Below are positions 40,631 through 61,762 of a DNA stretch of 64,000 bases, in pieces. The notes under the pieces are model-generated. The model was not told the origin of the DNA. It saw only the letters and a list, made by a program, of their open reading frames with translations, and made no database searches. Source of the stretch: Schizochytrium sp. TIO01 (taxonomy: Eukaryota; Protista; Bigyra: Labyrinthulomycetes). Numbering within the stretch: position 1 is the stretch's first letter; each line of letters opens with the position of its first letter. Made by a program: the position numbers and the translations under genes. The DNA is taken from contig SMSO01000014.1 in the NCBI GenBank assembly GCA_004764695.1, positions 3,777,648 through 3,841,647 of the forward strand, in the 5' to 3' direction.

Positions 40631-42637
40631 TTTGCTCCAACGGTCACCCAAAAATTGAAAAGATCTTTATACTAAGTCGACAAAGCGCACAAATTGGCGA
40701 ACAAATAAATTCATGACGATCACCATGACACCGTCGTAGCACACGTAAATCCCAATGAATTGTGATAGTTCCCAAAGTTAGTCCTGAGGTTGATTCATAA
40801 AAAATGCAGAACGACAATGACCCTAGCTTTCACCTTTCATTGAACCAGACTTGGATTCAATGAAACAGGAGCGCCTTTCTCGCTGGGTATTTCCTGGATA
40901 CTTTACTTCACCTGGATAAGCTGGTTATATCCAAATCCTGATTCATAAAATCGTTTGCTACTATCTTTCCATCCGCGTCCAAGAGAGCTCTACTTGCAGG
41001 GCGGGTTCCAAGAGCAAGAAGAACCGCAGGCAGCACAGACATGAACTAGACTTACCAAAAACGAGGCGGCTTGAACACGGGTAACTCGGCTTTCACAAAG
41101 ATGCAGACGTTGCGGGATTGATCAAGCCTGGTCGGAGTTTGAACTCTCTCGGCTTCGTTGGATTTTCTTTTCTGTTCTTTCACGTTCTTTTCCGTCAACC
41201 CTACTCTATACTAATAATAGTACGTACCAATTCATTAATTTTATTTATCTATTTTATTATTTATTCATTGAAAATACTATTAAGGCCTACTAGTATTGAT
41301 CAATTTTTATTTTTATTTAAAGAAAAAAACTTTTCCTGAGGAATAGTCACAGATACTATCATGTAAATATCGCTTATTGTAGAACCTGTGATGATGAAGT
41401 TTTTTTCTTGTTTTCTTTTTTCATTTATAGATATTATGTATAAGTTGTGGACAATGTTTTTATATTAAGAGTTTGGGGACTCACAAAGCAAAACCACGAA
41501 AGAAGACCAGCGATGTCATTACAGAAGGCGGGATCACCAAAGAAACGAAAATCGACTGGACATTGGAGGTATAGAAGCGAAAAAGCTTGATATTTTTCTT
41601 GTGTAGAGATTTCGACGCACATAAGTATGTATCTACCTGGATGCATGATTAGTTGGTCACTACAAACAAAATTCGGTTATCTTTTCTTTAACCCACAAAC
41701 TGTTGACAGCAATAGAATTGTGTTACACTTGGGGTTTATTAATGGACAGTGTGGTAATGCAAACGTGGGCTTGTTGTCATTGCTGTTAGTTAATCTTAGG
41801 GTCAATATTCACATTAACTGGGAAACTATGTAAGGCCAAGGAATTGCAGAGGCGTTTTTATGCCTCTTCCTTCCTCGTCACATTTCACATTCTTTAAGAA
41901 CAAAGACAACTTAGACATGTTCTAAAGAACCAAATTTCAGAACAATAACAACCCATCAGGACAATTTTGACATTTAATACAAACCACTTTGACTTCATCG
42001 AATCATCGAATCCCAAGTTATGTCCAATATCTCATAACCAAACTTTCTAACTGATGAAATTAAAAAACTTGCACGATCTAAATTGTGGATTCAAGCGCAG
42101 TCTTGAATGCTTTGCTCATCGCAGCCAATGCTATTCAAGGATGCGTGTAAATTGACATTTCACCATGAAGAAGCGAAATGGCCAAGGAATCATCGTCATG
42201 AAATATAGCCACGCGCTTCACATCGCCTAAACAAACAGTTTTCGCATCCCACTAACCAGATGTTTAGTCTATCAGCTTACACTGGAGAAAAGCACTTTCT
42301 TTATTTTCTTGCTCTTCGACTTATCGCATTTGTAGGTACTTAGATATCAACTTGGCCCTCGCAAAATGTCTGCTTTGGAAACTTTAGATTTCAGGTGTTG
42401 GAGAGAACTTGGAGAGAGGACGCCAAAGTGTTTACTTTTTACCATGACAATGACTGTGGTTCTTTACTTATTACTAGTACGGTAATAATATATATTTCTC
42501 TAAAAAACCATTAGGAAAAGAAGGGAATGAAAGGAACGAACGAACAGACATTTTCCTGACACAACAACTTTCGAAGACCAAATCACCTATCCTTCTGCTT
42601 GGTGAGGGCCGAGACGGCATCGGAATGCGCTGGGTCC

Positions 42638-45277
42638 ATGTCGGTTCTGCCTGTGGACGTGGGTGGACGCGTGGAGGCATCCTCAAATTCCTTTGCGCCT
42701 GACGAGGAGGCCGAACGGCGAACTGCGCAACATATTTCTCATGATAGCGAGTTCTACCAATGTATGAACGCGAATGAAGACAACGAGAGCGGCGCGAGAA
42801 ATCAGGGGTTTACGAGACTCGAAGAGTCTCGACCTTCGAAGCCGTGGTGGGATTGGCTGCTTGGAGATGCACGCCGAGAATACCATGCGAGTATCAGCGC
42901 TGGTCGCCAGAAACCGCGATCTGCAGCAGCAAGCTTTTTTGGACACGGTGAAACTTGGAGGTCTGGGGGCTACTTTGGAGTCGCAAATAGCGAGCAAGGT
43001 CAAGGCCCAAATAGCAGAGACTTTGCTTATGAGGGAGAGGAGGATGAGGACCTTTGGGTGGCACAGAACAACTTGGACGACTTTTTTACAAGGGTGTACA
43101 GCTACTTCGTTGAGGGAGGCTTTGCATGCATTATTACAAAGGGTATTGTGAATGTAGTGACCTTAGGTTTTACAGTTGTGTTCTCAACCTTCCTGCTTGG
43201 ATTTGTAGACTGGGCTAAGCTTATGACATGCAAAGATGAAACCACATGTTTCGCTTTCGGAGAATACGTCACTACACTGGGCTCGCATTCCTCATGGGTC
43301 TTCAGAGCGTTTGTCGTACTCTACTGCGTCCTCTTCTCGTTGTACTGGACCTGGTCCGTGACATCATTTCTATCGAGTATCAAGCGCCACTGGGAGATTC
43401 GGTGCTTTTATGTGCGTCGCCTTGGCGTCACAACCCGACTTTTACAAACCATGGACTGGTCCGAGGTGGTAGATCGTATGATCCAAGTACAAGAACGTGG
43501 TGAATACCCCATTCAAATTAATGGTAGCAGCTTCACAGCCAAAGATGTGATTATGCGTATTATGCGACGTGAGAACTATATGATCGCCATGATGAGCGAG
43601 TCTGTCTTACCGGTGGGGACCAGCTTGTATGCTCGCGACTCATGGTTTCTTGGAAAAAATCTTGAACTCATGCTTGATTTAACCATATTAGAACCTCTTT
43701 TTGACGAACAGCACAATCTTCGTCGGCATGATCTAAACCCCAAGGCTTTGCAACGCCGATTTAAGTTCTTTGGATCGCTTTGCCTTCTTCTCGTACCATT
43801 CTCGATCGGCTTTATGTTCATATACTCATTTCTGAAATATGCAGAAGAGTTTCACTCTAAACGGAACTACCTTGGACCACGCACGTGGTCCCCCTTCGCG
43901 TTGTGGAAATTCCGCGAATTTAATGAAGTAAAGCACCTCTTCTCTCGTCGTACTGTTGCTTCAATGAAGCATGCTGACTTGTACATTCGACAGTTCCCTA
44001 CACCACTACCTACAGTGGTGGCTGGTGGCGTTTCATTTATTGTTGGCGCCTTTGTAGCCGTACTCATGCTTTTCACTCTCATGGATGAAAGTATTCTTCT
44101 TCACATTACTCTTGGTGGCCGTGATCTGGTGTGGTACATTGCAATTTTCTCGGGTGTCTTGGCGATCTCCCGCAGCCTTGTACCCCCTGCGGAGGAGTTA
44201 GTATTCAATCCAGATAAAGCAATGCGTCGTGTGGTCGCTTATACTCACTTTCTTCCCGACGCATGGCGATCGCGCACACATACTTATGATGTGCGTGATA
44301 ACTTCAGTGACTACTTCCAATATAAAGCGGTTCTTCTGTTGCGGGAGCTACTTGGTATCTTGACTACTCCTTACATATTGCTTGTTGTCCTTCCTCCGCG
44401 CGCTCAACTTATAAGCGAGTTTATCCAAGCCCGAACTGTTAGTGTTGATGGAATTGGAGAACTATGCATCTACTCGCTCATGGATCTTAGTGCCCATGGT
44501 GATCGTCGCTATGGCTCCGAAGGCAATCGTGTGGACACCGACCTTGGAAGATTTGTTAGGGTGGATGGTCATTCGGCTGTCCGAGCTGACGGAAAGCTTG
44601 AAAAATCATGGTTGAACTTTCGTCTGAGCTATCCCAACTGGCAAGACGACCAGGCTGTAGATCCTTCACTCGATGACCGACTTGCGGCTTTCCAGCGGGA
44701 AATGGTTAGCACCTCTCTTATGCGTTCACAGAAATTTGGAGATGAAGAAGACACCAGTCACTTTGCTTCTCCGCATCAAGCTGCAGGATTCGAGTCATTT
44801 AATCGTAGATCTCCAAGTTCATCATCTGTTTTGGACTCCTCACAGGAACTTCATGATCAACGCCATAGACTGTCGATGTCAGGTTCCTTCGCAGCCACAA
44901 CGGCTGCAATTGATCTTGACAGAAAACGTCGAGAACGTTTGCACTCACGCAACCAGGGAAATGATAGTGTCCACTCTCGAGCTTACAAGCCACTGTACAC
45001 AGCCGCAAGTACAACACGCCAGCTTGGAGAAACAGCTGACCATGATTATTTTGGTGCATCGGAAATGGCCATTCTTCCTCTTGACACTTTTCGTTATCCA
45101 AGCGCAGAAAACTACTTTTACTGGCTTGAAGAGTATCGAGATAACCTTGAAGAACCACAACCCCCCTTACCAGCTACCTCAATGCCACCTGAGGTACATG
45201 CGCAGCCAAATACAGAACGTGCACAAGCCGGCACGGCGGTCGAAATGACACAGTCATCATCAGTATCTAATAAGTAA
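42638..45277 (+). CDS. ATG9: Autophagy-related protein 9 (lipid scramblase)
   Basis: ATG9 motifs: NLDDFFTRVYSYFVEGGFACII, RIMRRENYMIA, LGPRTWSPFALWKFREFNEVKHLF, YIRQFP, YTHFLP, VDGIGELC, GKLEKSWLNF. First ATG is at 42638 (the ORF track starts at TTG 42599). Confidence 0.97.
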   Translation: MSVLPVDVGGRVEASSNSFAPDEEAERRTAQHISHDSEFYQCMNANEDNESGARNQGFTRLEESRPSKPWWDWLLGDARREYHASISAGRQKPRSAAASFFGHGETWRSGGYFGVANSEQGQGPNSRDFAYEGEEDEDLWVAQNNLDDFFTRVYSYFVEGGFACIITKGIVNVVTLGFTVVFSTFLLGFVDWAKLMTCKDETTCFAFGEYVTTLGSHSSWVFRAFVVLYCVLFSLYWTWSVTSFLSSIKRHWEIRCFYVRRLGVTTRLLQTMDWSEVVDRMIQVQERGEYPIQINGSSFTAKDVIMRIMRRENYMIAMMSESVLPVGTSLYARDSWFLGKNLELMLDLTILEPLFDEQHNLRRHDLNPKALQRRFKFFGSLCLLLVPFSIGFMFIYSFLKYAEEFHSKRNYLGPRTWSPFALWKFREFNEVKHLFSRRTVASMKHADLYIRQFPTPLPTVVAGGVSFIVGAFVAVLMLFTLMDESILLHITLGGRDLVWYIAIFSGVLAISRSLVPPAEELVFNPDKAMRRVVAYTHFLPDAWRSRTHTYDVRDNFSDYFQYKAVLLLRELLGILTTPYILLVVLPPRAQLISEFIQARTVSVDGIGELCIYSLMDLSAHGDRRYGSEGNRVDTDLGRFVRVDGHSAVRADGKLEKSWLNFRLSYPNWQDDQAVDPSLDDRLAAFQREMVSTSLMRSQKFGDEEDTSHFASPHQAAGFESFNRRSPSSSSVLDSSQELHDQRHRLSMSGSFAATTAAIDLDRKRRERLHSRNQGNDSVHSRAYKPLYTAASTTRQLGETADHDYFGASEMAILPLDTFRYPSAENYFYWLEEYRDNLEEPQPPLPATSMPPEVHAQPNTERAQAGTAVEMTQSSSVSNK

Positions 45278-45599: not shown

Positions 45600-48500
45600 A
45601 TGGATCCTCCAAATAGTTCACCGACCAAGGCTGACAGCAACACAGAAGCACTGAATCTGGAACCTAATGAGCTCTCTTCTCAATCTTTACATATGGCATC
45701 ACTGAATACGAATAGCGATGAGCAAGCCGCACAAGTCGCCCTAAACAAGATTGACAATGAGAAGCACAATAGCGGTATGGGTAACATTGAGGCGGAAGCC
45801 AGAGATAACGTGGGAGACTGGAATGAAACTACTGATGGGATTAAAGGGATTCCTTTGGAAGAAAGCTCAGAATCGAATGGAGAAAAAGTCAGTGCCAATC
45901 TTTATCCAGATTCTTCTTTTTTACATGACTCCCTTTCAACTACATTCGAGAGCGGACAAACTTCTTCTACATCTCTCAAAGTCGGCGATGTTGTCGAGAT
46001 ACGTGTAAGCATAGATGCAGAATGGTGTGCAGGCAATGTTTGCGCCATTTATGAGGATGGATCTTACAGGGTTCAGTCTACCAATGGTGAATACGTAACT
46101 CAGAAAATTGGAGACTGTCTCAGACTTTGTCAAAGAGCATCTTCACAAGGAGATGTCGCCCCCATTGAAAATGACCTTCCTGAACGGGAAGTTAACTTAC
46201 TGAAAGCAGAGGGAAGCTCAATAGAAAAGTCATTAGACTTGTCTTTTGTTAAAGCAGAGCTCGTTCAAGGATCAAAGGTAAAAGTCAAGCACCCGAAGAC
46301 AGATCTTGATGCGCAAGCAACAATTGAGTGTGCGCATGAGGATGGCACCTTCGACATCATTTTCAATGATGAAGAAAGATTGACACATGTGTTAGCTGAT
46401 TCTATCAAATCGTTGTCACATCACGGTGCCAGTACTACTAACTTTTGCATAGGCGACCTTGTCGAATGTAATTTTGGAGGTGAAGGAAAGTGGTCCGCCG
46501 CCACAATATCTGAAGTGCACTCGGATGGGTCTTATGATCTAATATCTAATGACGGATATCGAGAGGACAACGTTCAATTAGTAAATATAAGACACAGTTT
46601 AGCAAAACAAGAGAGCTTAGATAGTGACGAATCATTTTGTCAAGGAGATAAAGTTGAGGCAAGATATTGTGGGGGAAAGAAATTTTATTCAGGTACAATT
46701 TCTAAGAGAAACCCCGATGGAACGTATGCAATTACTTACGATGATGGTGACATCGAGTCAATGGTTTCAAGAAACCTTATACGACGTCACGCTCTTAACA
46801 TTCGCACCAAAGATGTTGATACAGAAGTTCTTTGTGAAGGAACGACTATAGAGGGAAACTTTCTTGGCAAGGGTCGTTGGTTCCCCGCAAAAGTCTCTCG
46901 CGTTCGTGCAGACGGTACGTACGACATAGAGTATAACGATGGCGATATAGAAAAAGGAATCATTCGAGAACGGATCAAAGTTATAGGTTTACCAAGTCAA
47001 GTGTCTGTGACTAGCAACAATGACGAAGCAAGCAAACTTCATGAAGGAACCAAAGTTGAAGCTCAGTACAAAGGCCGTAGTAGATTTTATCCAGGCAAAA
47101 TCTCGAGAGCACGTTTGAATGGCACTTACGATATCGACTACGACGATGGAGAAAGGGAAACAGGCGTTGCGCGAGAACTGATCAGAGTGCCAGGCTCGTC
47201 AAGCATAGTGTCTGTGACAAGCAACAATGACGAAGTTAGCAAACTTCATGAAGGAACCAAAGTCGAAGCTCAGTACAGAGGCCGTAGTAGATTTTATCCA
47301 GGCAAAATCTCGAGAGCACGTTTGAATGGCACTTACGATATCGACTACGACGATGGAGAAAGGGAAACAGGCGTTGCGCGAGAACTGATCAGAGTGCCAG
47401 GCTCGTCAAGCATAGTGTCTGTGACAAGCAACAATGACGAAGTTAGCAAACTTCATGAAGGAACCAAAGTCGAAGCTCAGTACAGAGGCCGTAGTAGATT
47501 TTATCCAGGCAAAATCTCGAGAGCACGTTTGAATGGCACTTACGATATCGACTACGACGATGGAGAAAGGGAAACAGGCGTTGCACGAGAACTGATCAGA
47601 GTGCCAGGCTCGTCAAGTAATAGCCCTGAATCCAGCAATAAATTTGGTAAAAACAAAATTTGCAAGGGCACAAGGGTTGAAGCTCGATATAAGCATGGAA
47701 GCAAGTACTATGCAGGTGAAATATCTCGAGTACATTTGGATGGGACCTACGACATTCTCTATGACGATGGAGATAGAGAGAGACGAGTCGCTCGAGATTT
47801 GATTAGAACGATAGGTAGACCAAGAACCATATCTACTGACAGTGAAGGAAATAGCGGTACTTTCAGTGACAGTGACAGTGACAGTAACGAAGATGAAGAA
47901 GGTAGCTTCCAACAAGGAGATAGAATAGAAGCTCGATTCAATGGTGGCGGCAAGTACTATCCTGCGGTTATATCTCGAGTACATTTGGATGGTACTTACG
48001 ATATTAACTATGACGATGGTGACAAACAAAGGGGCGTGGAACGTAGCATGATTCGAATTGACAAAAAATCAACTTTGAATAAAGTTTATGACCAGCAAAA
48101 TTTCCAGGTTCTAGCCGAGGGTGTCCCGGTAGAAGCTCCGTGCAAAGATGAATCAAAACTTAAAAAAGGAATCATTGATCGTAGAAATGCTGACGATACA
48201 TACAATATCAGATTTGATGACGGTGAGTTTGAAGTTCGAGTTGACCAACAAAGTATTAAAGTCATTGCTCCTCAAACAGAGCAAAGTATAAATTTCGCAC
48301 AACGTAACGACGTTCAGAGATCGAATTTAAAATCAGACCAATCAGGTATTTTATCATTACCTTCAGAGAATTTAAGTATTGAACGATCTGGTTCCGAACG
48401 AGATTTATATTCGAAATATACCACGCAGGAACGCTCGCATCAAGCAAAGACACGGCAACGAGAAAGACTGAACAACGTGAAAATGAGAAACTGTCTGGAA

Positions 48501-51500
48501 CCAAGTTTGCGCAGTCGAACGTCAGACGAATCACGGGAGCGTTATAGTAGAGCAGATACAAGTAGAACGCGCAATCGAATCGCAGATAAAAGTAGAATGA
48601 GGAATCGAGTAGAGGACGACGGTTATATGTCAAAAACAGAAGCAGACGCTCAGTCTGCGAGAGAACAGGAAAATAGAGATGCAATCATGGAAAAATTAAA
48701 AACTCTTCATGTTGAGGACGCAGAAAACCTTCTCTACGCGTACTTATCTATGGATGAGAAATCATGTGAGCAAATCTTTAACCGCAAACTTGATTCTACG
48801 GAACAGGAACAGGAAAACACGGAGAAGCTCAACGGAAAGCATTCTGCCTTTGCTGCTCGAGACTATCCAGATCACATGACCATGCTCATGTATGCTGCAA
48901 AGAAAGGTCATCACAATGTTGTGAGATTTCTGGTCAGGCACGCAACCAACCCAGATGCTCGCTATAATTTAAAGGTAAATTTAAAGGAGGCAACACGGGG
49001 ATATTCAGCCTTAATGCTTGCAGTAGAGGGTGGACATGTTAAAATCGTCAATGAGCTGGTCAGATATCGGCTTCCTTTGGAAACTCTAAAAATCAATGAT
49101 CGTGCGTCTCCCTATGCTTTTATTCCTCAAATAAAACCCCGGGAAAAAGCTGAAAATAGAAGTGTTGCACAGACAATAACCTTGCAAAATCAAAATGAAA
49201 CTGCTTTGCATATCGCGTGTGCACTTCCAGAGGAGCAAGATGAGATTGTGAAGCTTCTTTGCTCTCACAAAGCACTCACAGACATTGCTGATGCTCGAGG
49301 CTTTACACCTCTCCACCATGCATGTATTAGAGGTCACGTTGCAATTGTAGAATATCTTCTTAATAAAGGTGCCAATGCAGCGATCAAAACCCATGAACAA
49401 GTAAGTCCGCTTCATTTGGCGGCCCAATACGGTCATGGACTTATTGTCAAACTACTCTTAGAGAAAATCTCGCTGCTTGTTGACACTGAAGATTGGAAAG
49501 GTCAGAGTGCCCTCCATCTCGCCTTTGAAAGATACTTCTACTTAAGTCGCCTTTGTTGGAATACAGTTAGTCTTTTCAAGGATCAGTTCAAAGATTTGTT
49601 TACAGAGGAGGATGCAACAGACGCCGACAGACCTGATCCATATTTAGAAGAGGGATTTTACTCTAGCCATATAGGAGGTGAAATGTCAAATCCTAAAGGT
49701 TCTGGCGATGAAATAGGTCTACAAGCGGGGATCATGATGACAAAGCCTACAAACAATAAAGATGAACAAACAGCCAAAGACCTATTATATCTTCTTGGGG
49801 ATCATGGAAATCCTCCACTTGTAGAGAAGAAAGAGATGAAGGAGGAGACCAACACCTGGAGGAATAACATTTTCCGAGAGGCTCGGCTCCCGGTTGGAAT
49901 CAACGATAAAATTCGTCCAATTTTCGAGAGAATGATTGCGTCAGGAGAACGTCTCTATGATTCTAGACCTCGGCCAGCCTCATGCAAGTTTATGGTAGAT
50001 ACCGGGGTCCCAGCGATGCTACTTAATCATTACCTCCCTCGGTTATGTGTTGAAGTTGCTAATCTACCGGACCAGGAGAAGGTGTTACGTGTAAAGAGTG
50101 CACTGGGGATTAAAAAACACACTGTCGATGTCAGCCGACTGTGCCGCCAAAGTGCTGAGACAGAAGAGATGCCTAATACTTATCCGTTTTATAAGCATGA
50201 GTCTGCAGATCTTCTGCTTTTCAGTGAACTTCAAAATCCCAACAACAAAGCAAAACTACGCGAGATTGGCAGCGCACGTGTATTCTCAATGAAGGCTCTT
50301 AGTGGCCTTGAGAACTTGGAGCAACTACTCTTTGCGATTGATAGCCAGAACTTACTGATTAAGTGCCTCCTCGATGCGGGTGCCGACATGAGCAAGGAGG
50401 ACAATCGTGGCACTCCAGCATTCACCAAGTATGCACAGGATAGTTGGTTCGATGCAAACGAACAAGAAATGCAACGAATTCGGGACTCGCCATCAGAAGC
50501 AGGTCATGATGCAGAAATATTCCTGGATAAACGAACGCAACATGCGGTGCATCAAGCATGGGTGTCAAATGGCCGCCGATGTTATGCGCTATGCTTGCTA
50601 TTCATGTGGATTGCTGGATTACTTCTCCTGACTTGGGTAGCCTTGAAATATAGTGGACGCGACTCTTACGAAGCCCCATCAATGCAGGCAGCGATCCGGG
50701 AACGCATTGGCAGCGATGAATGGGACGAATATGAAAGTAAGAGCCTAGAGGATGTTGGAAATATTGCAGAATGGCAGCAGTATCTCGAAAACGTTTTTGT
50801 AAGTTCTCTCTGGGAGACAAATCAGACGTACGTGGATGCTCAAGGACAAATCCGCAATGTCGGAAATCATGGGCCTCTTCTAAGTGGCCAGCTTGGCTTG
50901 GTTGGGCGGCCGAGATACCGTCAGCTTCGGACGCGGTCTGATGCGTGCTTGAACGAGAATCCTTCGATTATCCCTCAAACAGAGGATTTCTGCTTTTCTC
51001 CATACACGACGCGAGTATACGGGTCTCCTTTAATTTCTGATGAAGATCGTCGGGATCTTTTATGCACATTTAGTAATGGAACAGTCCTCCTGCTGGAATG
51101 GGCCGAGTATCAATCCTACCCAGTACAAGGTAGATATGGTTACTATAGAGATGGAGGCTTCAGCATTGATTTACCGTCAGACTATGAAGAGGCAATTTCG
51201 CTTCTTCATGATCTGGGTAATTGTAACTTCATTGACCTCAACACTCGCTTTGCTGCACTTGAGTTCACCTTGTATTCACGATCACAAGGTTTGTTCACAT
51301 ATGGAACAGTGTATCTTGAACTGACGACCACCGGTATGATTTCACCTGGGCAAAAGTGGCGAACTTTCAAAGTTGTTAGCTATGCGACGCACCAGGATCT
51401 CAAGGATATCTGGGCAGAGGTACTTCTTGGCGTTTTTCTTCTTTGTTATTTTGCTTCCGAAGTATGGAGTATGTTCCAGCCTTGGCCTGAGATGAGAGCT

Positions 51501-52505
51501 ACTAAATCATTGCGGGCATCTGATGGCATTATAAGCAATCAATTGGTGAGCTCTAAATACCCTGCCTTTTGGTATCCCTCGATGAGAGAGGTAAGGCATC
51601 ACGGCTGGGAAGATGAGAGCAATGCTCAAGACGCGATTTTGCTATTTCGATTCCGGAAAAATTGGCCTGTTTACCTTCGGAAGTCATCTTACATAATTCC
51701 ACCTTACCTTTATGATGGCTTCAACTTTGTCGATGTTTTCGTGATGGTCGTGGTGATGTCGCTCATTAGTACGCATTGTCTCTTAGTGGTCCAAGTCAAT
51801 GTAGCAGCTCCTTCGTGGTATGAGCTTGCAGCGTCAAACATGTATATTGACGTGTCTCATTTTCTCTGGTTGTCAGCTTGGCGACAGTATCTCTTGGCAA
51901 TTACAGTTTTTCTCTTTTATATAAAAACATTAGAGTACCTCCAGGTAGCTCCTTGGCTTACTATTCCCATTCTAGTGATTGGAGGAATGCTTTCTCGTCT
52001 CGCAGGTTTCTTTGCAATCTTTGCAGTTTTCATCATGGCATTTGGTTTATTCGATTATGTGCTGTATGGTATGGAGTATGAGCCTGTGCAGTCGGTGTGG
52101 CGTGGAATTCTCGGTGCATTCCGGGCTTCCTTAGGCGAGGTTGATTTTGACGGTAAGATTGAGACAGACCAAACTGTTGGCGTTGTTATGTCTCTTGCTG
52201 CTGCTTCGCTTCTAGTCATCCTCCTCCTCAATCTTCTTATTGCTATCATGAATGAGGCTTACGAGGAAATCAAGGAAACAGCTGAAGCTAGATGGTGTTA
52301 CAAACAATTTTCGGCCTACCTTGCTCATCAGCGTAGGGAGACGATGGGTTTTAAGTTTCAGCTTCCGTTTCGCTACCTACACAGGTTGTGCTGTACAAAG
52401 CAAAAGCTTCTCAAGTTCGATGTCGTTGTAGATGAAAATAGAACTGGTAAGATTACGGTTGTTGTTGGCAGAAATGGGCACGCACAAGTTGTCCCCGCGC
52501 CATAA
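45600..52505 (+). CDS. Tudor-repeat / ankyrin-repeat / polycystin-2 (TRPP)-like cation channel
   Basis: Uninterrupted 2301-aa ORF. 11 Tudor/Agenet-like units (G.KVEA.Y.G...YYPG.ISR...DGTYDI.YDDG), ~45975-48265. 6-7 ankyrin repeats (e.g. GFTPLHHACIRGHVAIVEYLLNKGAN), ~48870-49525 plus ~50350-50420. PKD channel ~50580-52280 with GRPRYRQLR, FIDLNTRFAALEFTLY, FNFVDV, pore FRASLGEVDFD and S6 LLNLLIAIMNEAYEEIK. Confidence 0.9.
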   Translation: MDPPNSSPTKADSNTEALNLEPNELSSQSLHMASLNTNSDEQAAQVALNKIDNEKHNSGMGNIEAEARDNVGDWNETTDGIKGIPLEESSESNGEKVSANLYPDSSFLHDSLSTTFESGQTSSTSLKVGDVVEIRVSIDAEWCAGNVCAIYEDGSYRVQSTNGEYVTQKIGDCLRLCQRASSQGDVAPIENDLPEREVNLLKAEGSSIEKSLDLSFVKAELVQGSKVKVKHPKTDLDAQATIECAHEDGTFDIIFNDEERLTHVLADSIKSLSHHGASTTNFCIGDLVECNFGGEGKWSAATISEVHSDGSYDLISNDGYREDNVQLVNIRHSLAKQESLDSDESFCQGDKVEARYCGGKKFYSGTISKRNPDGTYAITYDDGDIESMVSRNLIRRHALNIRTKDVDTEVLCEGTTIEGNFLGKGRWFPAKVSRVRADGTYDIEYNDGDIEKGIIRERIKVIGLPSQVSVTSNNDEASKLHEGTKVEAQYKGRSRFYPGKISRARLNGTYDIDYDDGERETGVARELIRVPGSSSIVSVTSNNDEVSKLHEGTKVEAQYRGRSRFYPGKISRARLNGTYDIDYDDGERETGVARELIRVPGSSSIVSVTSNNDEVSKLHEGTKVEAQYRGRSRFYPGKISRARLNGTYDIDYDDGERETGVARELIRVPGSSSNSPESSNKFGKNKICKGTRVEARYKHGSKYYAGEISRVHLDGTYDILYDDGDRERRVARDLIRTIGRPRTISTDSEGNSGTFSDSDSDSNEDEEGSFQQGDRIEARFNGGGKYYPAVISRVHLDGTYDINYDDGDKQRGVERSMIRIDKKSTLNKVYDQQNFQVLAEGVPVEAPCKDESKLKKGIIDRRNADDTYNIRFDDGEFEVRVDQQSIKVIAPQTEQSINFAQRNDVQRSNLKSDQSGILSLPSENLSIERSGSERDLYSKYTTQERSHQAKTRQRERLNNVKMRNCLEPSLRSRTSDESRERYSRADTSRTRNRIADKSRMRNRVEDDGYMSKTEADAQSAREQENRDAIMEKLKTLHVEDAENLLYAYLSMDEKSCEQIFNRKLDSTEQEQENTEKLNGKHSAFAARDYPDHMTMLMYAAKKGHHNVVRFLVRHATNPDARYNLKVNLKEATRGYSALMLAVEGGHVKIVNELVRYRLPLETLKINDRASPYAFIPQIKPREKAENRSVAQTITLQNQNETALHIACALPEEQDEIVKLLCSHKALTDIADARGFTPLHHACIRGHVAIVEYLLNKGANAAIKTHEQVSPLHLAAQYGHGLIVKLLLEKISLLVDTEDWKGQSALHLAFERYFYLSRLCWNTVSLFKDQFKDLFTEEDATDADRPDPYLEEGFYSSHIGGEMSNPKGSGDEIGLQAGIMMTKPTNNKDEQTAKDLLYLLGDHGNPPLVEKKEMKEETNTWRNNIFREARLPVGINDKIRPIFERMIASGERLYDSRPRPASCKFMVDTGVPAMLLNHYLPRLCVEVANLPDQEKVLRVKSALGIKKHTVDVSRLCRQSAETEEMPNTYPFYKHESADLLLFSELQNPNNKAKLREIGSARVFSMKALSGLENLEQLLFAIDSQNLLIKCLLDAGADMSKEDNRGTPAFTKYAQDSWFDANEQEMQRIRDSPSEAGHDAEIFLDKRTQHAVHQAWVSNGRRCYALCLLFMWIAGLLLLTWVALKYSGRDSYEAPSMQAAIRERIGSDEWDEYESKSLEDVGNIAEWQQYLENVFVSSLWETNQTYVDAQGQIRNVGNHGPLLSGQLGLVGRPRYRQLRTRSDACLNENPSIIPQTEDFCFSPYTTRVYGSPLISDEDRRDLLCTFSNGTVLLLEWAEYQSYPVQGRYGYYRDGGFSIDLPSDYEEAISLLHDLGNCNFIDLNTRFAALEFTLYSRSQGLFTYGTVYLELTTTGMISPGQKWRTFKVVSYATHQDLKDIWAEVLLGVFLLCYFASEVWSMFQPWPEMRATKSLRASDGIISNQLVSSKYPAFWYPSMREVRHHGWEDESNAQDAILLFRFRKNWPVYLRKSSYIIPPYLYDGFNFVDVFVMVVVMSLISTHCLLVVQVNVAAPSWYELAASNMYIDVSHFLWLSAWRQYLLAITVFLFYIKTLEYLQVAPWLTIPILVIGGMLSRLAGFFAIFAVFIMAFGLFDYVLYGMEYEPVQSVWRGILGAFRASLGEVDFDGKIETDQTVGVVMSLAAASLLVILLLNLLIAIMNEAYEEIKETAEARWCYKQFSAYLAHQRRETMGFKFQLPFRYLHRLCCTKQKLLKFDVVVDENRTGKITVVVGRNGHAQVVPAP
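47001..47617 (+). repeat. Three near-identical 207-bp (69-aa) in-frame tandem repeats, each encoding one Tudor-like domain
   Basis: Units start at 47001, 47208 and 47415 with GTGTCTGTGAC. Copies 2 and 3 are almost identical. Copy 1 differs at a few positions in its first ~72 nt. Confidence 0.97.
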
Positions 52506-53089
52506 TAAGTAGCAGCACCTCGGTCAACGTAGTGTCGGGTTGTACTACATTTACACATCAAATCTTGCCTCTGGTGCTGCCTAGTTGCTGGCGCAGATCG
52601 TTTTTTCGTCCTACATGTTGCGAGATTTTATCTAACTCCATAGCATGGTAAGTAAAGTAGTACCCAGTCTGGCTATTTAGACCTGTGCAGGGGTGACCGT
52701 GAAGCGAATTCAGTTAGTGATTCTTAACCTTTAAAGAAACAATACAGACTAATTAAATTCGAAGAGCAGAGCAACCAGAGTAACACAAACGATGCGATGT
52801 TTAGACCAAGTAGTACAAGCTTTAAAAAAGATTCCCCAAACAATCTTGTCATTCTATTTACAATGTAGACATGGCGGGCGAGAAGCTACTCTATAGTCCT
52901 CAGATTTGCGTGGTCGTATCAGACCCATGAAGCGATTAAAACACATCGAAACGCAAAAACAAACATATAGCGTTACGGAATACCTTTCAAGTTGTCACCA
53001 AATCTGGAAAAAACTATGAACCTCAGGAAAACCAAGCTAGAGTGATGAATATTGCAATCTTATTGCCAGTTGCTCTTGACCTTGTATTT

Positions 53090-53121
53090 TGCACGCATGC
53101 ACGCATGCACGCACGCACGCG
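53090..53121. repeat. GCAC/GCAT microsatellite
   Basis: tgcacgcatgcacgcatgcacgcacgcacgcg. Confidence 0.85.
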
Positions 53122-53606
53122 CCACAGCCTCCTTCTTGGATCCCTGCTCAAACATACTGCGATAGACTTCTTCGCAAACACCTCAAAGAAAGACCTGCCT
53201 GCATTGCTTGCGTGTAATTCCTTACGTCATCACGATGATATTCCCTTGAAATCCGCGCTTCTCCATCTTGCAAGACCGGAAGGACGTTACGCCGAAACCA
53301 CCAATACTATCCAGTATCAGAAACAGTTACAAAACCGAACTGTGGGCCAGAGAACCGAGAGCATTTCGGGTCCCTTTGACAGGATTTCAATGCGGCTCTG
53401 CAATCTCTCAATCGATCTATCGACGGCTCTAAACTAAGGCTGCTGGAGCGAAGCGTGCCTGACAGCGGCGAGCGTCGCGAGGCTGCCATGGATGGCGGGA
53501 CTGGTGACAGCCTGACTGCTGCCGGCGTGGACCTTCGTCGGTTGGCGAAAGGGGACGACAGAGAAGAAATGGTGATTTGCTGTGAGATTTGTTAAAGTTT
53601 GTTATC

Positions 53607-53640
53607 GTTTCTTTGTTTCTTTGTTTCTTTGTTTCTTTGT
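53607..53640. repeat. (GTTTCTTT)4 repeat
   Basis: Four perfect 8-mers start at 53607, 53615, 53623 and 53631. Confidence 0.9.
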
Positions 53641-53890
53641 TGTCATTCTCGTTATGTATTATAAATTTCAATTTAAAAGAACAAAAAGAACGAACAAAAC
53701 AAAAATCATTACGTATCGTGAGTGAATGGAGTGAAAGGGAAAGTTTCTGGGACCAATTAGAGACCAAAGCGAAGACAAAAACCTCAAACCAGAACGGACT
53801 CGAGCGTGCAAGCAGGCCAAACAACGCCAGTCCACGCACCCAGCAGCGCTTTGAGGAAAGCTGGTAATTTGCGGGCGCGAGGGAGTCAGA

Positions 53891-53930
53891 AAGCAAGCAT
53901 GCAAGCATGCAAGCATGCAAGCAAGCAAGC
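53891..53930. repeat. GCAAGCAT / GCAA microsatellite
   Basis: aagcaagcatgcaagcatgcaagcatgcaagcaagcaagc. Confidence 0.9.
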
Positions 53931-55048
53931 GTGGCAAAGAAATGCGCCCTGTTCATAACAGCTGTGAAAATAAAACAAAACAGAAATAAAATATTACTAT
54001 ATGCTGTTATTTTTATTTGTCAGTTTTGTAATTGAAAAGATCGCCAACAATTTTCTTAATGGCGGATAATATGGAGAAAGAACTCGTAAAAAAGAAAGAA
54101 AGAAAGCAGGCTTTCCTTTCCTGCAAAGTGCGAAAAGAGAAATGAAATCAGAGCAGATACCATGGACACATTTACATTGGAGGAGCATTAACCTGGGCAT
54201 GATAACCTACAAACTCGAGGAGGTAAACAAAGACATGTTTTACATAGGTCCCTGCTGCATCGTACTTACTTTCCGCAAATAACCGCTCGGTACCTGGCGC
54301 GTTCATCATGCTTTGCTTGAACCCTATTCATTTCTATGGGCCAAAAAGAAAAGAAAGAAAGAAAGAATGAATGAAAGAAAGGAAGAGATAGAGAGAATAA
54401 GGATTTCTAAGGAAGAGCGGAAAGGACTCCGTTTGATTTATTGAAGGAAGGACTTTCGTTGCCAGGCTTAGCAATGACGTCTGCGCCAAACCCGATCCAA
54501 TCCGTCAGCGTGGCAACGAGGGGAGGGCTGTGCTCGCTCGGCGGCTCGCAGGTTTACTGACTTGGCTGGTCGCTTGGACTCGGAGGCGAATAGTCAACCA
54601 ACAAGACCAACTTGGACTTGGCCATTACGGGGTTGACTGATTATTTCTGTGCTGTTTTTTTCATTGGAGACGGCACAAGAACAGGCTTGCCCAGACACAA
54701 GTCCGGCACCAGGGCAAACTGCTGAGACAACGCACGGGTGTTGATTGGGGGATACTGCTTGGAATACATCTGGACGACTGCGAGCTTGTGCGAGAAAATT
54801 GCGTGAATTCTTGTGCTGTATTGGTCTGCGGAATTAATTGAGGTCCAGGATCTTTTGGGTCCTTAAGTAGTAGGTGGTACCTACCTACAATTTGCTACAT
54901 CATTATCGTTGGCCACGTTGAGGATATCCAAGAGGAGTTGGCTTGGGAGAGCTTCGTATTCGGAGGAGAGGGAGTTTCAGAGCGAAATCATTGACTAAGG
55001 TTTTAGATTTGTGCAAGAGTTTGGGTTCTAGGAACTGGAGCATCCATA

Positions 55049-55741
55049 ATGCCGGCTACTATGGACGAGGAGGTACGCTTTGCGGTGCTGTCCATTTGGC
55101 GCGCCTTTCGCAATGGCCTGTTTTACGGAACAAAAATCAGGCTACCGCATGCACTAGTCATGACGCTACTTTTTAGGCGTAACAGCGATCTCAAGAAGAT
55201 GATGGACCCAATTGCTCGAATGACATGGGAACATTCACGAAATCTGGCGCTCTTCGCTGGTTTTTACAAGATCCTCTTAGCCGCAGCGCGTTTGGTTCGC
55301 GTGCGGCTTGGAGATCGCCTTGAAACTCCTCCGGGTGTGCCTGTGACGCAGCTAGATTCATTTTTGTCCGCAGCATTGGTGGGCCACTTTGTGTGGGGGC
55401 GTTATTCCTCGGTCAATTCGCAGATTGTCATGTATCTGCTGAGCCGTGTCATCTTTGCCTTTTGCCATTTGCTAGCAGAAAAGGATGTCCAACCTTTTGC
55501 GTCTGTGACCTTTAATGAAGCCTATCCGTGGTTGGCTTCATTCGTTTGGGGCTCAGTATTGTGGCTCTATGAGTACCACCCTGAGAGGCTGCAGGCCTCG
55601 CTCTTTAGCTCGATGGACTTTCTCTACCACCAAACAAATGAGTGGGAGACCGTGGAGGACTTCTTGCCTAGCCCGGCCACCGCGGGCATCTTTGTATACT
55701 TGGTGTTGCGTGCTCGCCAAATGGTGCGAGGCAGCAAATAA
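55049..55741 (+). CDS. PXMP4: Peroxisomal membrane protein 4 (Tim17/PMP24 family)
   Basis: FRNGLFYGTKIRLPHALVMTLLF, TWEHSRNLALFA, SSVNSQIVMYLLSRV, VWGSVLWLYE, LQASLFSSMDFLYH are diagnostic PXMP4 motifs. Confidence 0.95.
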   Translation: MPATMDEEVRFAVLSIWRAFRNGLFYGTKIRLPHALVMTLLFRRNSDLKKMMDPIARMTWEHSRNLALFAGFYKILLAAARLVRVRLGDRLETPPGVPVTQLDSFLSAALVGHFVWGRYSSVNSQIVMYLLSRVIFAFCHLLAEKDVQPFASVTFNEAYPWLASFVWGSVLWLYEYHPERLQASLFSSMDFLYHQTNEWETVEDFLPSPATAGIFVYLVLRARQMVRGSK

Positions 55742-55967: not shown

Positions 55968-57845
55968 TCAAGTATGGGACAGGTAAGATTCCGAGTGCCG
56001 CGAGTTGGGAGTATGCGGTGAGTGATTTGAGGGATCAATGACGCTTGCACGACTATGAGACACACCCGAGTGAGGCGAAGGTGCTGAATCCGGATCGCGA
56101 ATAAGCATTGGTCTGAGGAAACGATTTTCAAAGCGCTCCCAACGGGTTGCGACACCCACAGTTTCGGCTGTACCCTTTTCCTCCATGTCATCCCCATCCT
56201 CTAATTCGAAGGATGTTGCAGGCGGTCGAGTAGCCGGGGTAGTGCTTTGGAGTTGGCTCGCCGCGTGCCCAAACGGGTTTTCATTCCCCAAATAATCATC
56301 TTCAAGGCTATCAAAGCTCGCTCTTGAGTTGCTACGAGACAGATCCGTAAGCTCGACTTCAGTGAGGCCATGCTCATCAGTACCTTCAACAATCACCATG
56401 GACGGGTCAATGCGAGCAACATCACGGTGCGCCTCTGAAATGAGTTTGTGCTCCTCGTCGTAAGGAGAAGGAATAGGGGAGCGAGCCGCGCGGTCAACGA
56501 GACCAAAGCGAGTTGACAAACATCTTGTGCTACCACCAAAGAAGAACACTGTAATGAAAATAATAATTGTGGTGGCAGCCTCAAACACCTGACCAGTGGA
56601 CTCCTTGGTGAGCATGTTAGAGGAGGATGCAGCAAGAGCGAATGCCATGCCTCCTCGCAAGCCGGACCACCAGAGCATGAAAATTTCGCTGCAAGAAATC
56701 CGAAGTGCACGCTTGCGCCCGATGTTACCTAAGATACAGAGTGGGACAACACTAGCAAAACGAGCCACCATGCACGCAAACATCCCAGCAAATCCAAACG
56801 CGACAGAGCCCCGACTCCAGTTTGCATCACCTGTGAAAATGGCCATTCCAAGATAAATGAAAACAAAGGTTTCCGCCATGTGAGCGAGGATGTGGAAGAC
56901 TTCTGAAATAAACTTTGAGGCATCGACAGACAAGTTGTGGCGTGTGAAAGACCCCATGATGATGGCAGTGAAGAGCATGCTTACGATACCCGATATGTTC
57001 ACGCCCTGCGCCAATGTATAGGAAAGGTAAGGTAGCGTGATGGCAACTGTGCACTCGAGCTCACGCAGGTTGACATCCCAGAGGCGGAGCCACTTGAAAA
57101 GAATAGCGCTACCAATGCCCATAGCAATGCCCATGAGGGCAGATCCAAAAAGATTGATGATGAAGTCAGTGACAGCGTCCATTACGGGCTGCGGACTGGT
57201 AGAATCAAGAACGTTATTCTCAAAGAGGACCAGGGTACGGTAGAGCACGATTGCGACAGCATCGTTTAGGACGCTCTCTCCGAAAACGAGAATGTGCAAG
57301 CCAGGTTTGACGCCAATGCTTTGGAAAACAGCAATCACTGTAACAGGATCTGTGGCGGAAATGATGGCGCCAAAAACAAGACACTCAATCCAACTGGCAG
57401 TGTAGATGGCATTGCTGCTGTAGGACGAGAGCGAAAACATAATGCCGCCCACAACGAAGGAGGAAATGAGCGTGCCAAAGATTGCGAGTGCAAGAATAAG
57501 GAAAAAGTTGCCAATGAACATGTCACGGCGAATAGTAAATCCAGATTCGAAGATAATGGGCGGGAGCAAGACGATGAAGAAAAGGTTCTCGTCAAACTCC
57601 GTCAGCTTCTCAACAGCTGAGATCATGCCAACATGATCGATCGTGCGAATTAATCCACCTATTACCATGCCCAGCATCAACAGCAGGCCAGCCTCAGGAA
57701 CAACTGATTGTTGCAATTTACGGGACACATAGAGCAAGAGTTGCGAGAACAACAGCGTCGCTATGAAAACTAGCAGCGCCAAGAACTCGATCTCCTCTGT
57801 CTTTTCCTCCTCCGTAATGGAGGTTGTGTTAGGGGCCCGCTCCAT
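55968..57845 (-). CDS. Na+/H+ exchanger (CPA1 family, intracellular NHE8/NHX-like)
   Basis: FFIVLLPPIIFESG, FGAIISATDPVTVIAVF, LVFGESVLNDAVAIVL, AETFVFIYLG, WWSGLRGGMAFALA; ~12 TM segments and a cytoplasmic tail. Confidence 0.95.
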   Translation of the reverse strand: MERAPNTTSITEEEKTEEIEFLALLVFIATLLFSQLLLYVSRKLQQSVVPEAGLLLMLGMVIGGLIRTIDHVGMISAVEKLTEFDENLFFIVLLPPIIFESGFTIRRDMFIGNFFLILALAIFGTLISSFVVGGIMFSLSSYSSNAIYTASWIECLVFGAIISATDPVTVIAVFQSIGVKPGLHILVFGESVLNDAVAIVLYRTLVLFENNVLDSTSPQPVMDAVTDFIINLFGSALMGIAMGIGSAILFKWLRLWDVNLRELECTVAITLPYLSYTLAQGVNISGIVSMLFTAIIMGSFTRHNLSVDASKFISEVFHILAHMAETFVFIYLGMAIFTGDANWSRGSVAFGFAGMFACMVARFASVVPLCILGNIGRKRALRISCSEIFMLWWSGLRGGMAFALAASSSNMLTKESTGQVFEAATTIIIFITVFFFGGSTRCLSTRFGLVDRAARSPIPSPYDEEHKLISEAHRDVARIDPSMVIVEGTDEHGLTEVELTDLSRSNSRASFDSLEDDYLGNENPFGHAASQLQSTTPATRPPATSFELEDGDDMEEKGTAETVGVATRWERFENRFLRPMLIRDPDSAPSPHSGVSHSRASVIDPSNHSPHTPNSRHSESYLSHT

Positions 57846-61595: not shown

Positions 61596-61737
61596 GGTAG
61601 CAAACACGCGCTGATTCACGCAAACAGTGAAGAGGCAGCGAGAGACGCCAGCGTAGCCGACTTTCTCCCAATCCGAATTTGAATTCCTCTCAACCTCGAA
61701 TTCGCTGCTTTTGCAAATTCAATTTTCAGTCATTCGA

Positions 61738-61762
61738 AATCAATCAATCAATCAATCAATCA
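61738..61762. repeat. (AATC)6 microsatellite upstream of the fumarase gene
   Basis: aatcaatcaatcaatcaatcaatca. Confidence 0.9.

What the first reader, a model, noticed from the sequence alone, without database searches (positions are those of the whole stretch)
45600..52505. Single polypeptide joining an 11-unit Tudor array, ankyrin repeats and a polycystin-2-type channel
Seen: one stop-free 6.9-kb frame carries 11 Tudor/Agenet-like repeats, an Arg/Ser-rich linker, ankyrin repeats and a complete 6TM PKD channel. Established: Tudor domains typically read methyl-Lys/Arg or bind nucleic acid, and canonical TRPP channels have no Tudor domains. Inference: this may be a cation channel tethered or gated by a multivalent cytoplasmic reader array, for example one binding methylated axonemal or cytoskeletal proteins. 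I do not know this architecture from characterised proteins. It is the best candidate for an undescribed system in this window.
Basis: partly seen in the sequence, partly recalled or inferred. Interest (0 to 1): 0.85.

Follow-up and report, generated by a model that had tools for sequence, protein, structure and literature searches.

The report
Polycystin channel carrying eleven Tudor domains
One uninterrupted gene in a marine thraustochytrid-like protist joins eleven methyl-mark-reader (Tudor) domains and ankyrin repeats to a polycystin-2-type cation channel; I found this combination in no other protein, and whether it is made as one protein is still unproven.

Summary
Window 45600-52505 (+) is one stop-free ATG-to-stop frame of 2301 codons. 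It encodes 11 Tudor units (residues 125-903), an Arg/Ser/Glu-rich linker (904-1090), ankyrin repeats (1091-1331), and a polycystin-2-type channel with a TOP domain and six membrane helices (1661-2224). The linker has no stop in frame, against 5-15 stops in each of the other five frames, and 0 of 20,000 shuffles stayed open. So the two halves belong to one coding frame.

Both halves come from families that shuffle domains freely:
- Tudor arrays occur across stramenopiles, fused to EF-hand, PUB, SAM, deaminase, TBCC, kinesin or kinase domains.
- Ankyrin-polycystin channels of protists carry other arms, such as kinase, WD40 or glutaredoxin.

None of 118 Tudor-array relatives has a channel. No channel relative listed or scanned has a Tudor domain. 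In this genome, only this one of about 20 polycystin loci coincides with a Tudor array.

Most likely the array is a flexible, multivalent cytosolic anchor that places the tetrameric channel on a methyl-marked scaffold. That role is inferred. The run data (contigs from runs only guessed to be RNA) neither prove nor exclude a single transcript.

The scan noted this same stretch twice, and other polycystin fusions in this genome, but not this architecture on other DNA.

Verdict: new variant of a known kind, interest 0.55.

The parts
45600..52505 (+). Whole ORF, 2301 codons plus stop; no intron needed
45600..45971 (+). N-terminal Ser/Asn/Glu-rich low-complexity segment (res 1-124), no domain hit
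45972..48308 (+). Array of 11 Tudor units (res 125-903), each about 50 aa of barrel plus about 15 aa of Ser-rich spacer; units 4-10 (res 345-835) keep the full aromatic-cage pattern
47000..47617 (+). Three 207-nt tandem copies, 98% identical (Tudor units 6-8): very recent amplification or gene conversion
48309..48869 (+). Arg/Ser/Glu-rich linker (res 904-1090), open only in this frame; no similarity to any paralog or homolog fetched
48870..49592 (+). Ankyrin-repeat domain (res 1091-1331), shared with the Labyrinthulomycete ankyrin-polycystin relatives
49593..50306 (+). Variable insert (res 1332-1569), mostly not conserved in homologs, probably disordered
50307..50570 (+). Conserved helical pre-S1 region with an ankyrin-like motif (res 1570-1657)
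50580..50648 (+). Membrane helix S1 (res 1661-1683)
50754..51374 (+). Polycystin (TOP) domain between S1 and S2 (res 1719-1925)
51408..52271 (+). S2 to S6 with pore (res 1937-2224); Pfam PKD_channel covers res 2034-2224
52131..52139 (+). Selectivity-filter motif Leu-Gly-Glu (res 2178-2180), aligned to Leu-Gly-Asp of PKD2L1
52272..52502 (+). Cytosolic C-terminal tail (res 2225-2301), no EF-hand or coiled-coil hit

Best explanation
This is a real, intron-free gene for one subunit of a polycystin-2-type (TRPP) non-selective cation/Ca2+ channel.

Shown or following from homology:
- The single frame and all its domains.
- The topology. By homology to PKD2, the roughly 1650-residue N-terminus faces the cytosol.
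- Tetramer assembly, inferred from the family.

The N-terminus carries ankyrin repeats and, on a roughly 190-residue flexible Arg/Ser/Glu linker, a beads-on-a-string array of 11 Tudor domains. Seven of these look competent to bind methylated lysine (less likely methylated arginine). A tetramer would display 44 Tudor units, 28 of them with intact cages.

Inferred:
- The array does not conduct or sense ions. It acts as a high-avidity anchor that docks and clusters the channel on a methyl-marked cytosolic scaffold.
- That scaffold is plausibly the one used by the paralogous giant Tudor-array proteins of this genome, which carry EF-hands, SAM and PUB domains.
- Cation or Ca2+ entry and the Ca2+ sensors would then sit at the same spot.

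My odds: architecture encoded as one CDS about 0.9; the long form is actually made about 0.65; anchoring role given that it is made about 0.5.
For: One frame:
- One stop-free frame, with the linker open only in this frame.
- 9 of the 13 strain differences seen inside the ORF are synonymous. About 20 further differences lie in the roughly 800 nt after the stop.

Channel:
- Pfam Polycystin_dom and PKD_channel.
- phmmer to PKD2L1 5z1w E 5.4e-24 across the TOP domain and S3-S6, with LGE aligned to LGD.
- Even a low-confidence model matches only PKD2/PKD2L1 first (5k47, E 3.3e-16).
- Six hydrophobic helices, none in the first 1657 residues.

Tudor array:
- 11 units. The unit model has pLDDT 89.9, and its best structural matches are methyl-lysine readers: PHF20, MTF2/PHF1/PHF19, 53BP1, SGF29.
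- The profile aligns FYP..DGTY.I.Y.DG to PHF20 and SGF29.
- Cage positions are kept in units 4-10.

Context:
- The Tudor arrays of the four paralogous giants in this genome that I scanned sit with SAM alone (C33), EF-hands (C31), EF-hands and SAM (C24), or EF-hands and PUB (C3).
- Across stramenopiles they sit with EF-hand, PUB, SAM, TBCC, kinesin and kinase domains. That fits a targeting or scaffolding module.
- Contig X1 record 2 (48392-50491) runs from inside the linker into the ankyrin part. Short contigs also lie on the last Tudor units in three runs.
Against: - No run is on record as RNA, and contigs cannot show transcript starts.
- Word depth over the Tudor part is 0-4.5 against 7-32 further 3' in all four runs, with a rise at about 48400-48700 in three of them. 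This fits 3' bias on a 7-kb mRNA, but equally an internal start giving a Tudor-less channel.
- No ortholog with the same architecture was found, so conservation cannot vouch for function.
- The channel part sits on a long branch (0.99 changes per site).
- No ligand is known for any member of this Tudor-array family.
- I judged the cage from sequence only, not from model geometry.
Confidence: 0.4

Rival explanations
1. The Tudor array is a sensor that gates the channel. When it binds a methylated partner, or is released from one, the change passes through the linker and ankyrin repeats and alters open probability. The channel would then report the methylation state of a structure.
For: The array sits on the same cytosolic arm as the ankyrin repeats, and in other TRP channels that arm couples to gating (established knowledge for TRPN, TRPA and TRPV). 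Seven cages are intact. The nearest clusters in the ESM Atlas are ankyrin-gated TRPs: NOMPC, TRPA1 and pyrexia.
Against: About 190 residues of low-complexity linker, plus a further 240-residue insert that homologs do not share, lie between the array and S1. That is a poor transmitter of conformational change. The Ser-rich spacers between units also suggest flexible beads. There are no functional data.
Confidence: 0.15
2. The locus mostly makes two products. An internal promoter or start in the linker gives an ordinary ankyrin-polycystin channel like its paralog. The long Tudor-bearing form is rare or absent.
For: Contig depth is 0-4.5 over 47650-48400 and rises at about 48400-48700 in X1, X5 and X6. 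In-frame Met codons lie at residues 962, 1000, 1010, 1030 and 1051. All relatives work with 290-460 residues before the ankyrin repeats and no Tudor.
Against: The linker upstream of those Met codons is open only in the coding frame; 0 of 20,000 shuffles stayed open. That is not expected for an untranslated leader or a promoter. Contigs do lie on the last Tudor units in X1, X5 and X10. Depth also steps up at different, more 3' places in each run, as 3' bias would give.
Confidence: 0.2
3. The Tudor array is not a methyl reader. It is a general protein- or RNA-binding, self-associating scaffold. Together with the Arg/Ser-rich linker it drives condensate-like clustering of the channel.
For: The linker is Arg/Ser/Glu-rich. 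First-reader notes describe RS segments and patterned linkers next to Tudor arrays in other giants of this genome (untested). Units 1-3 and 11 lack the cage. Some Tudor and Agenet domains bind nucleic acids or unmodified partners (established knowledge).
Against: Four aromatic positions plus an acidic one are strictly kept in seven units. Those units otherwise differ by 40-60%, which points to selection on the cage itself.
Confidence: 0.15
4. The fusion is an assembly artefact, or a very recent neutral or decaying fusion without function.
For: The architecture is found in one species only. There is a 98%-identical internal repeat and a long branch on the channel part.
Against: Twenty runs from eight studies hold at least half of the sampled words of 47700-52900. 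Contigs of other strains cover most of the linker-ankyrin junction, with 48392-50491 in one piece. 6.9 kb contains no stop or frameshift, and the strain differences are mostly synonymous. The assembly is chromosome-scale, 37 contigs.
Confidence: 0.07

Closest known systems
Polycystin-2 / PKD2L1 (TRPP channels of animals; PDB 5k47, 5t4d, 5z1w)
   Same: Six helices, a TOP (polycystin) domain between S1 and S2, a pore loop with Leu-Gly-acidic filter, and a cytosolic N-terminus. These are the best sequence and fold matches.
   Different: No C-terminal EF-hand or coiled coil was detected. The filter has Glu instead of Asp. The N-terminal arm of about 1650 residues carries ankyrin repeats and 11 Tudor domains, which no solved or listed TRPP has.
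Ankyrin-polycystin channels of Labyrinthulomycetes (own-genome paralog at G000 C24, identical to P0002; Hondaea P0001, P0007, P0009; Mucochytrium P0004)
   Same: Same ankyrin + pre-S1 + TOP + pore layout, 38-51% identical over about 680 residues. The tree places the window gene, weakly (81/78), beside its own-genome paralog.
   Different: They have 290-460 residues without any domain hit ahead of the ankyrin repeats, and no Tudor. The window gene has a long branch and a unique linker and insert.
Stramenopile Tudor-array proteins (e.g. Phytophthora P0012, Pythium P0015, Aureococcus P0019-P0023, brown algae; own-genome giants on C33, C31, C3, C24)
   Same: Same unit type and tandem arrangement, 30-48% identical over most of the array.
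   Different: Their partners are soluble domains: EF-hand, PUB, SAM, deaminase, TBCC, kinesin, kinase, ankyrin. None of the 118 listed has PKD_channel or Polycystin_dom.
Oomycete PKDRR proteins (polycystin channels fused to ryanodine-receptor domains; PMC7399828, PMC4820453)
   Same: A precedent in stramenopiles for a PKD2-type channel that has gained a cytosolic domain from another signalling family.
   Different: There are no RyR domains here. The paper does not mention Tudor at all.
NOMPC/TRPN and other ankyrin-bearing TRP channels (functional analogy only)
   Same: A long cytosolic repeat array on a TRP channel that tethers it to the cytoskeleton. These are the nearest clusters by protein-language-model features.
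   Different: They lack a TOP domain, and sequence matches to the TRPM, TRPC, TRPV and TRPA families are about 20 orders of magnitude weaker than to TRPP. In NOMPC the tether is the ankyrin spring itself, not reader domains (my knowledge).

Membership tests
TRPP / polycystin-2-type channels | S5-pore-S6 region matching the PKD_channel model above its curated cut-off | tested here: met
   PF08016 61.1 bits against a cut-off of 22.4, res 2034-2224; 66.3 bits in the genome scan
TRPP / polycystin-2-type channels | Large TOP/polycystin domain inserted between S1 and S2 | tested here: met
   PF20519 57.5 bits against a cut-off of 23.6, res 1719-1925, flanked by S1 (1661-1683) and S2 (1937-1959); aligned to the TOP domain of PKD2L1
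TRPP / polycystin-2-type channels | Closest solved relatives by sequence and by fold are PKD2/PKD2L1 rather than other TRP subfamilies | tested here: met
   phmmer E 5e-24 (PKD2L1) and 2e-18 (PKD2), against 1e-4 or weaker for TRPM7, TRPC and TRPV. The top 40 Foldseek matches are all PKD2/PKD2L1, although the model is of low confidence, pLDDT 59
TRPP / polycystin-2-type channels | Acidic selectivity filter Leu-Gly-Asp | tested here: inconclusive
   Leu-Gly-Glu at 2178-2180 aligns to LGD of PKD2L1. The own-genome paralog has LGD. The acidic character is kept, but the effect on selectivity is unknown
TRPP / polycystin-2-type channels | Cation conductance as a tetramer | not testable with these tools
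   Needs electrophysiology
Tudor ('royal family') methyl-lysine/arginine readers | Barrel of about 50-60 residues made of antiparallel strands | tested here: met
   AF2 model of unit 6 from the 11-unit alignment: pLDDT 89.9, four strands plus a short fifth element. TM 0.84 and rmsd 1.6 A to PHF20 Tudor 2 (3qii)
Tudor ('royal family') methyl-lysine/arginine readers | Aromatic cage (about four aromatic residues, often with an acidic one) | tested here: met
   At sequence level only. Units 4-10 have Y/F (strand 1), [FWY][YF] (strand 2), Y-[DA] and Y-[DN]-D-G (strands 3-4), aligned to the FYPA...DGTY.V.F.DG region of PHF20 and to SGF29. Units 1-3 and 11 fail. Geometry was not inspected
Tudor ('royal family') methyl-lysine/arginine readers | Binding of a methylated ligand | not testable with these tools
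   Needs peptide arrays, ITC or pull-downs
Stramenopile Tudor-array family | Homology of the array as a whole to the tandem arrays of oomycetes, brown algae and pelagophytes | tested here: met
   118 proteins in all. In the top third of the list, E-values are given as 0, with 32-43% identity over 79-100% of residues 120-900. Own-genome paralogs reach up to 48%
Oomycete PKDRR channels | RyR (ryanodine receptor) domain on a PKD2-type channel | tested here: not met
   No RyR or RIH hit at E up to 0.1
Group-1 ankyrin TRP channels (TRPN/TRPA/TRPV/TRPC) | Transmembrane core of that group, without a TOP domain | tested here: not met
   A TOP domain is present, and core matches to TRPV1, TRPC and TRPA1 are E 5e-4 to 1e-2 only. 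Ankyrin repeats alone are shared

The most novel reading that the evidence does not exclude
An ion channel whose position, or even whose gating, is set by protein methylation. The 28 intact cages of a tetramer would read methyl-lysine marks on a cytoskeletal, flagellar-base or membrane-skeleton lattice. The EF-hand-bearing Tudor-array giants of the same genome would bind the same lattice. Together they would form a self-contained 'methyl-mark-addressed' Ca2+ signalling patch, a coupling of the methyl-reader and ion-channel worlds that has not been described.
Probability: 0.12. Interest if true: 0.85.

Novelty: new variant of a known kind. Interest (0 to 1): 0.55.

Why it matters
TRP and polycystin channels are placed and tuned by their cytosolic arms. 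How polycystins are fixed at particular sites, cilia included, is still poorly understood.

A channel that carries its own multivalent methyl-reader array would be a natural experiment. It would link protein methylation outside chromatin to the local placing of a Ca2+-permeable channel.

It also draws attention to a large family of Tudor-array proteins found across stramenopiles, in oomycete pathogens, brown algae and bloom-forming pelagophytes. I found no paper on this family. Its frequent pairing with EF-hands suggests a role in Ca2+ signalling.

Thraustochytrids can be transformed (my knowledge), so the idea is testable.

If the long form is not made, the locus is simply one more ankyrin-polycystin paralog.

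Tried and rejected
- Search for the same architecture elsewhere. I searched with the channel region at full-protein length, the Tudor region at full-protein length and the ankyrin-channel cut-out. I also ran an exhaustive HMMER search of 1.84 billion representatives with the channel part and Pfam scans of 12 long hits. None has Tudor plus channel. The window's own protein is in none of these sets.
- Metagenome contig scan with a two-paralog alignment: 309 pattern matches, none confirmed.
- ESM Atlas: only ankyrin-TRP clusters.
Own-genome context replaced this in part: the paralog on C24 has a PX-domain gene upstream. Hondaea P0001 (2724 aa) has DUF389, EH and PX domains ahead of its ankyrin-polycystin part and so looks like a merger of neighbouring genes with the channel.
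- Transcript test. The look-up of sequencing runs gave no run on record as RNA. The single read-laying run (5651 nt, beside the 207-nt repeat) gave only Logan contigs, so there is no verdict on transcript starts.
- The linker, the N-terminal 124 residues and the 1330-1560 insert were searched against all fetched loci and proteins: no similarity. The junction cannot be traced to a donor gene.
- Literature: no paper joins Tudor with polycystin in protists. 'Polycystin' mostly matched Polycystinea (radiolarians).
- A strictly flagellar role for the Tudor arrays is rejected as the main reading, because the family is rich in Aureococcus.
- Channel model: pLDDT is only 59. I used it for fold class only.
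- Complex prediction was not used: no specific partner is claimed.
Full report
**1. Observation**

The window holds a single ATG-to-stop frame at 45600-52505 on the + strand, 2301 codons. The open frame extends only 10 codons above the ATG (2311 aa). The upstream gene is a separate ATG9 homolog ending at 45277. So the N-terminus is bounded unless there is an upstream exon.

- several Tudor-type models: Tudor_5 E 3.9e-42, SGF29_Tudor 2e-26, Tudor_3 2e-22, Agenet 2.5e-18
- ankyrin repeats: Ank_2 2.7e-33
- Polycystin_dom, 1.8e-15, residues 1719-1925
- PKD_channel, 1.3e-16, residues 2034-2224

An iterated HMM built from one unit finds exactly 11 units between residues 125 and 903.

A hydropathy scan gives six membrane segments: S1 1661-1683, S2 1937-1959, S3 about 2040-2065, S4 2098-2116, S5 about 2119-2155 and S6 about 2192-2220. 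There are none before residue 1658.

**2. One coding frame or two genes?**

The 561-nt stretch between the last Tudor unit and the first ankyrin repeat (48309-48869) has no stop in the reading frame. The other five frames have 5 to 15 stops. None of 20,000 shuffles of it stayed open.

Base composition and third-position GC run on evenly through it. No in-frame stop, frameshift or splice junction appears in contigs of other strains.

Of the 13 strain differences that fall in the part of the ORF I laid, 9 are synonymous. The roughly 800 nt after the stop carry about 20 differences. Both halves therefore look like coding sequence under constraint, in one frame.

Transcription as one molecule is not shown:
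- No run is on record as RNA. The 14 'RNA?' runs are guesses and are kept as contigs.
- Contigs cover 48221-53300 end to end in X1, with neighbouring pieces overlapping by only 18-24 nt, so no single piece spans it. One piece runs from the linker into the ankyrin part (48392-50491).
- Short pieces lie on the last Tudor units in X1, X5 and X10.
- Word depth is low there (0-4.5) and rises towards the 3' end.
- A rise at about 48400-48700 in three runs fits 3' bias on a 7-kb mRNA. It fits an internal start equally well.

I had one read-laying run and kept it under 6000 letters, beside the 207-nt repeat.

**3. The channel half**

phmmer against all PDB chains gives PKD2L1 (5z1w, E 5.4e-24) and PKD2 (about 2e-18). 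It aligns the TOP domain and S3-S6. Other TRP subfamilies score 1e-4 or weaker.

The filter reads Leu-Gly-Glu (2178-2180) where PKD2L1 has Leu-Gly-Asp. The own-genome paralog has Leu-Gly-Asp.

A model built on eight sequences is poor (pLDDT 59). Even so, all of its top structural matches are PKD2 or PKD2L1 (5k47, E 3.3e-16).

By homology, everything before S1 is cytosolic.

**4. The Tudor half**

Units are about 50 residues of barrel followed by Ser-rich spacers. Units 6-8 are 98% identical at DNA level (3 x 207 nt, 47000-47617), so the array is still changing.

A model of one unit is confident (pLDDT 89.9). It superposes on PHF20 Tudor 2 (TM 0.84, rmsd 1.6 A). The next matches are MTF2/PHF1/PHF19, PHF20L1, 53BP1, SGF29 and LBR, which are mostly methyl-lysine readers.

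The unit profile finds the same proteins by sequence, and the alignment covers the cage-bearing strands.

Units 4-10 keep an aromatic residue at all four cage positions plus an acidic residue, although they differ by 40-60% elsewhere. Units 1-3 and 11 have lost two or more positions.

**5. Relatives and origin**

The best channel relatives are Labyrinthulomycete proteins (Hondaea, Mucochytrium) of 1300-1560 aa with ankyrin + TOP + pore and no Tudor. This is my own evidence that the genome is thraustochytrid-like.

The genome (64 Mb, 37 contigs) has about 20 PKD_channel loci. Only one is a close paralog: C24, 1514 aa, 51% identical, no Tudor. P0002 is that paralog from a public assembly.

In a tree the window gene sits weakly (81/78) beside this paralog, on a long branch. 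I read it as a lineage-specific duplicate that gained the array.

The array's nearest kin are other arrays in the same genome (up to 48% identity). They lie in giant ORFs of 2279-3220 aa that carry SAM alone, EF-hands, EF-hands with SAM, or EF-hands with PUB. None of those loci coincides with a PKD hit.

Across the 5.8-billion-protein set, the array finds 118 long proteins from oomycetes, brown algae, xanthophytes, pelagophytes and others. Their partners include EF-hand, PUB, SAM, deaminase, ankyrin, TBCC, kinesin, kinase and Roc/COR domains. None has PKD_channel or Polycystin_dom.

An exhaustive search with the channel part found many ankyrin-polycystin channels with long arms. The 12 long hits I scanned carry kinase, WD40, glutaredoxin or nothing recognisable, and never Tudor.

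Metagenome and ESM Atlas searches added nothing. The linker and the other low-complexity parts match nothing.

**6. How it most likely works**

Shown: one frame, a TRPP-type core, cytosolic ankyrin repeats, and 11 Tudor folds of which 7 keep cage patterns.

Inferred: the subunit tetramerises like its relatives. The tetramer then hangs 44 Tudor beads on long flexible linkers. Such a floppy, multivalent arm suits avidity-based docking more than force or conformational coupling.

So I favour an anchoring or clustering role on a methyl-marked cytosolic scaffold. The EF-hand partners of the sister arrays hint that the same scaffold gathers Ca2+ sensors. The gating, two-product, non-reader-scaffold and artefact readings are listed as rivals, with tests.

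One relative pairs the array with a TBCC (RP2-type) domain and another with a kinesin motor. But the family is also rich in Aureococcus, which to my knowledge has no flagella. A purely flagellar role is therefore unlikely.

**7. Comparison and novelty**

By every sequence and fold feature I could test, this is a member of the TRPP family, and its units are Tudor domains. It is not a PKDRR protein (no RyR domain) and not a group-1 ankyrin TRP.

Polycystin channels with borrowed cytosolic domains are already described in oomycetes (PMC7399828, PMC4820453). Earlier notes of this scan list DEP-, RyR- and ankyrin-polycystin fusions in this same genome.

The new element is the partner: a methyl-reader array on an ion channel. 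I found this in no database or paper.

I rate it a new variant of a known kind, interest 0.55. It would rate higher if the long protein and a cage-dependent partner are demonstrated, and low if only the short form exists.

Noticed in passing
G000 C24:4086599-4091143 (L015:3600-8144); L015:165-2501: Closest paralog of the channel (1514 aa: ankyrin + TOP + PKD, no Tudor), with a PX-domain gene just upstream. Hondaea P0001 (2724 aa: DUF389 + EH + PX + ankyrin + PKD) looks like a gene model that merges the syntenic neighbours with the channel.
   Followed up: partly
L025:278-8494 (C33), L026:417-7310 (C31), L027:83-9745 minus strand (C3), L028:375-7214 (C24): Four giant intron-free ORFs (2279-3220 aa) made largely of the same Tudor units, joined to SAM, EF-hand pairs, PUB or SAM_PNT domains. 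They belong to a stramenopile-wide family, often mis-named 'cytidine deaminase', on which I found no paper.
   Followed up: partly
P0167, P0213, P0145 (one search hits): Protist polycystin channels with other long cytosolic arms: kinase + WD40 propellers + ankyrin (2578 aa), kinase + ankyrin (2169 aa), ankyrin + glutaredoxin (1969 aa).
   Followed up: partly
window 42599-45277 (+): ATG9 homolog (PF04109, E 4e-143) directly upstream of the channel gene, separated by a 322-nt AT-rich spacer.
   Followed up: partly
window 55968-57845 (-), 55049-55741 (+), 34629-37094 (-): Na+/H+ exchanger, a weak Tim17/22/23-like protein (below the Pfam cut-off), and a family-25 glycosyltransferase. These are ordinary neighbours with no evident link to the channel.
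   Followed up: partly
window 52505-53430: Contigs of all four runs continue past the stop codon into the roughly 920-nt spacer before a convergent 175-aa ORF (53429-53956, minus strand, no Pfam hit). Strain differences are about ten times denser here than in the ORF.
   Followed up: no
window 60001-62000: Local GC rise to 0.555 (the window mean is about 0.44), with overlapping long ORFs on both strands (59769-60839 +, 59778-61619 -). Not examined.
   Followed up: no
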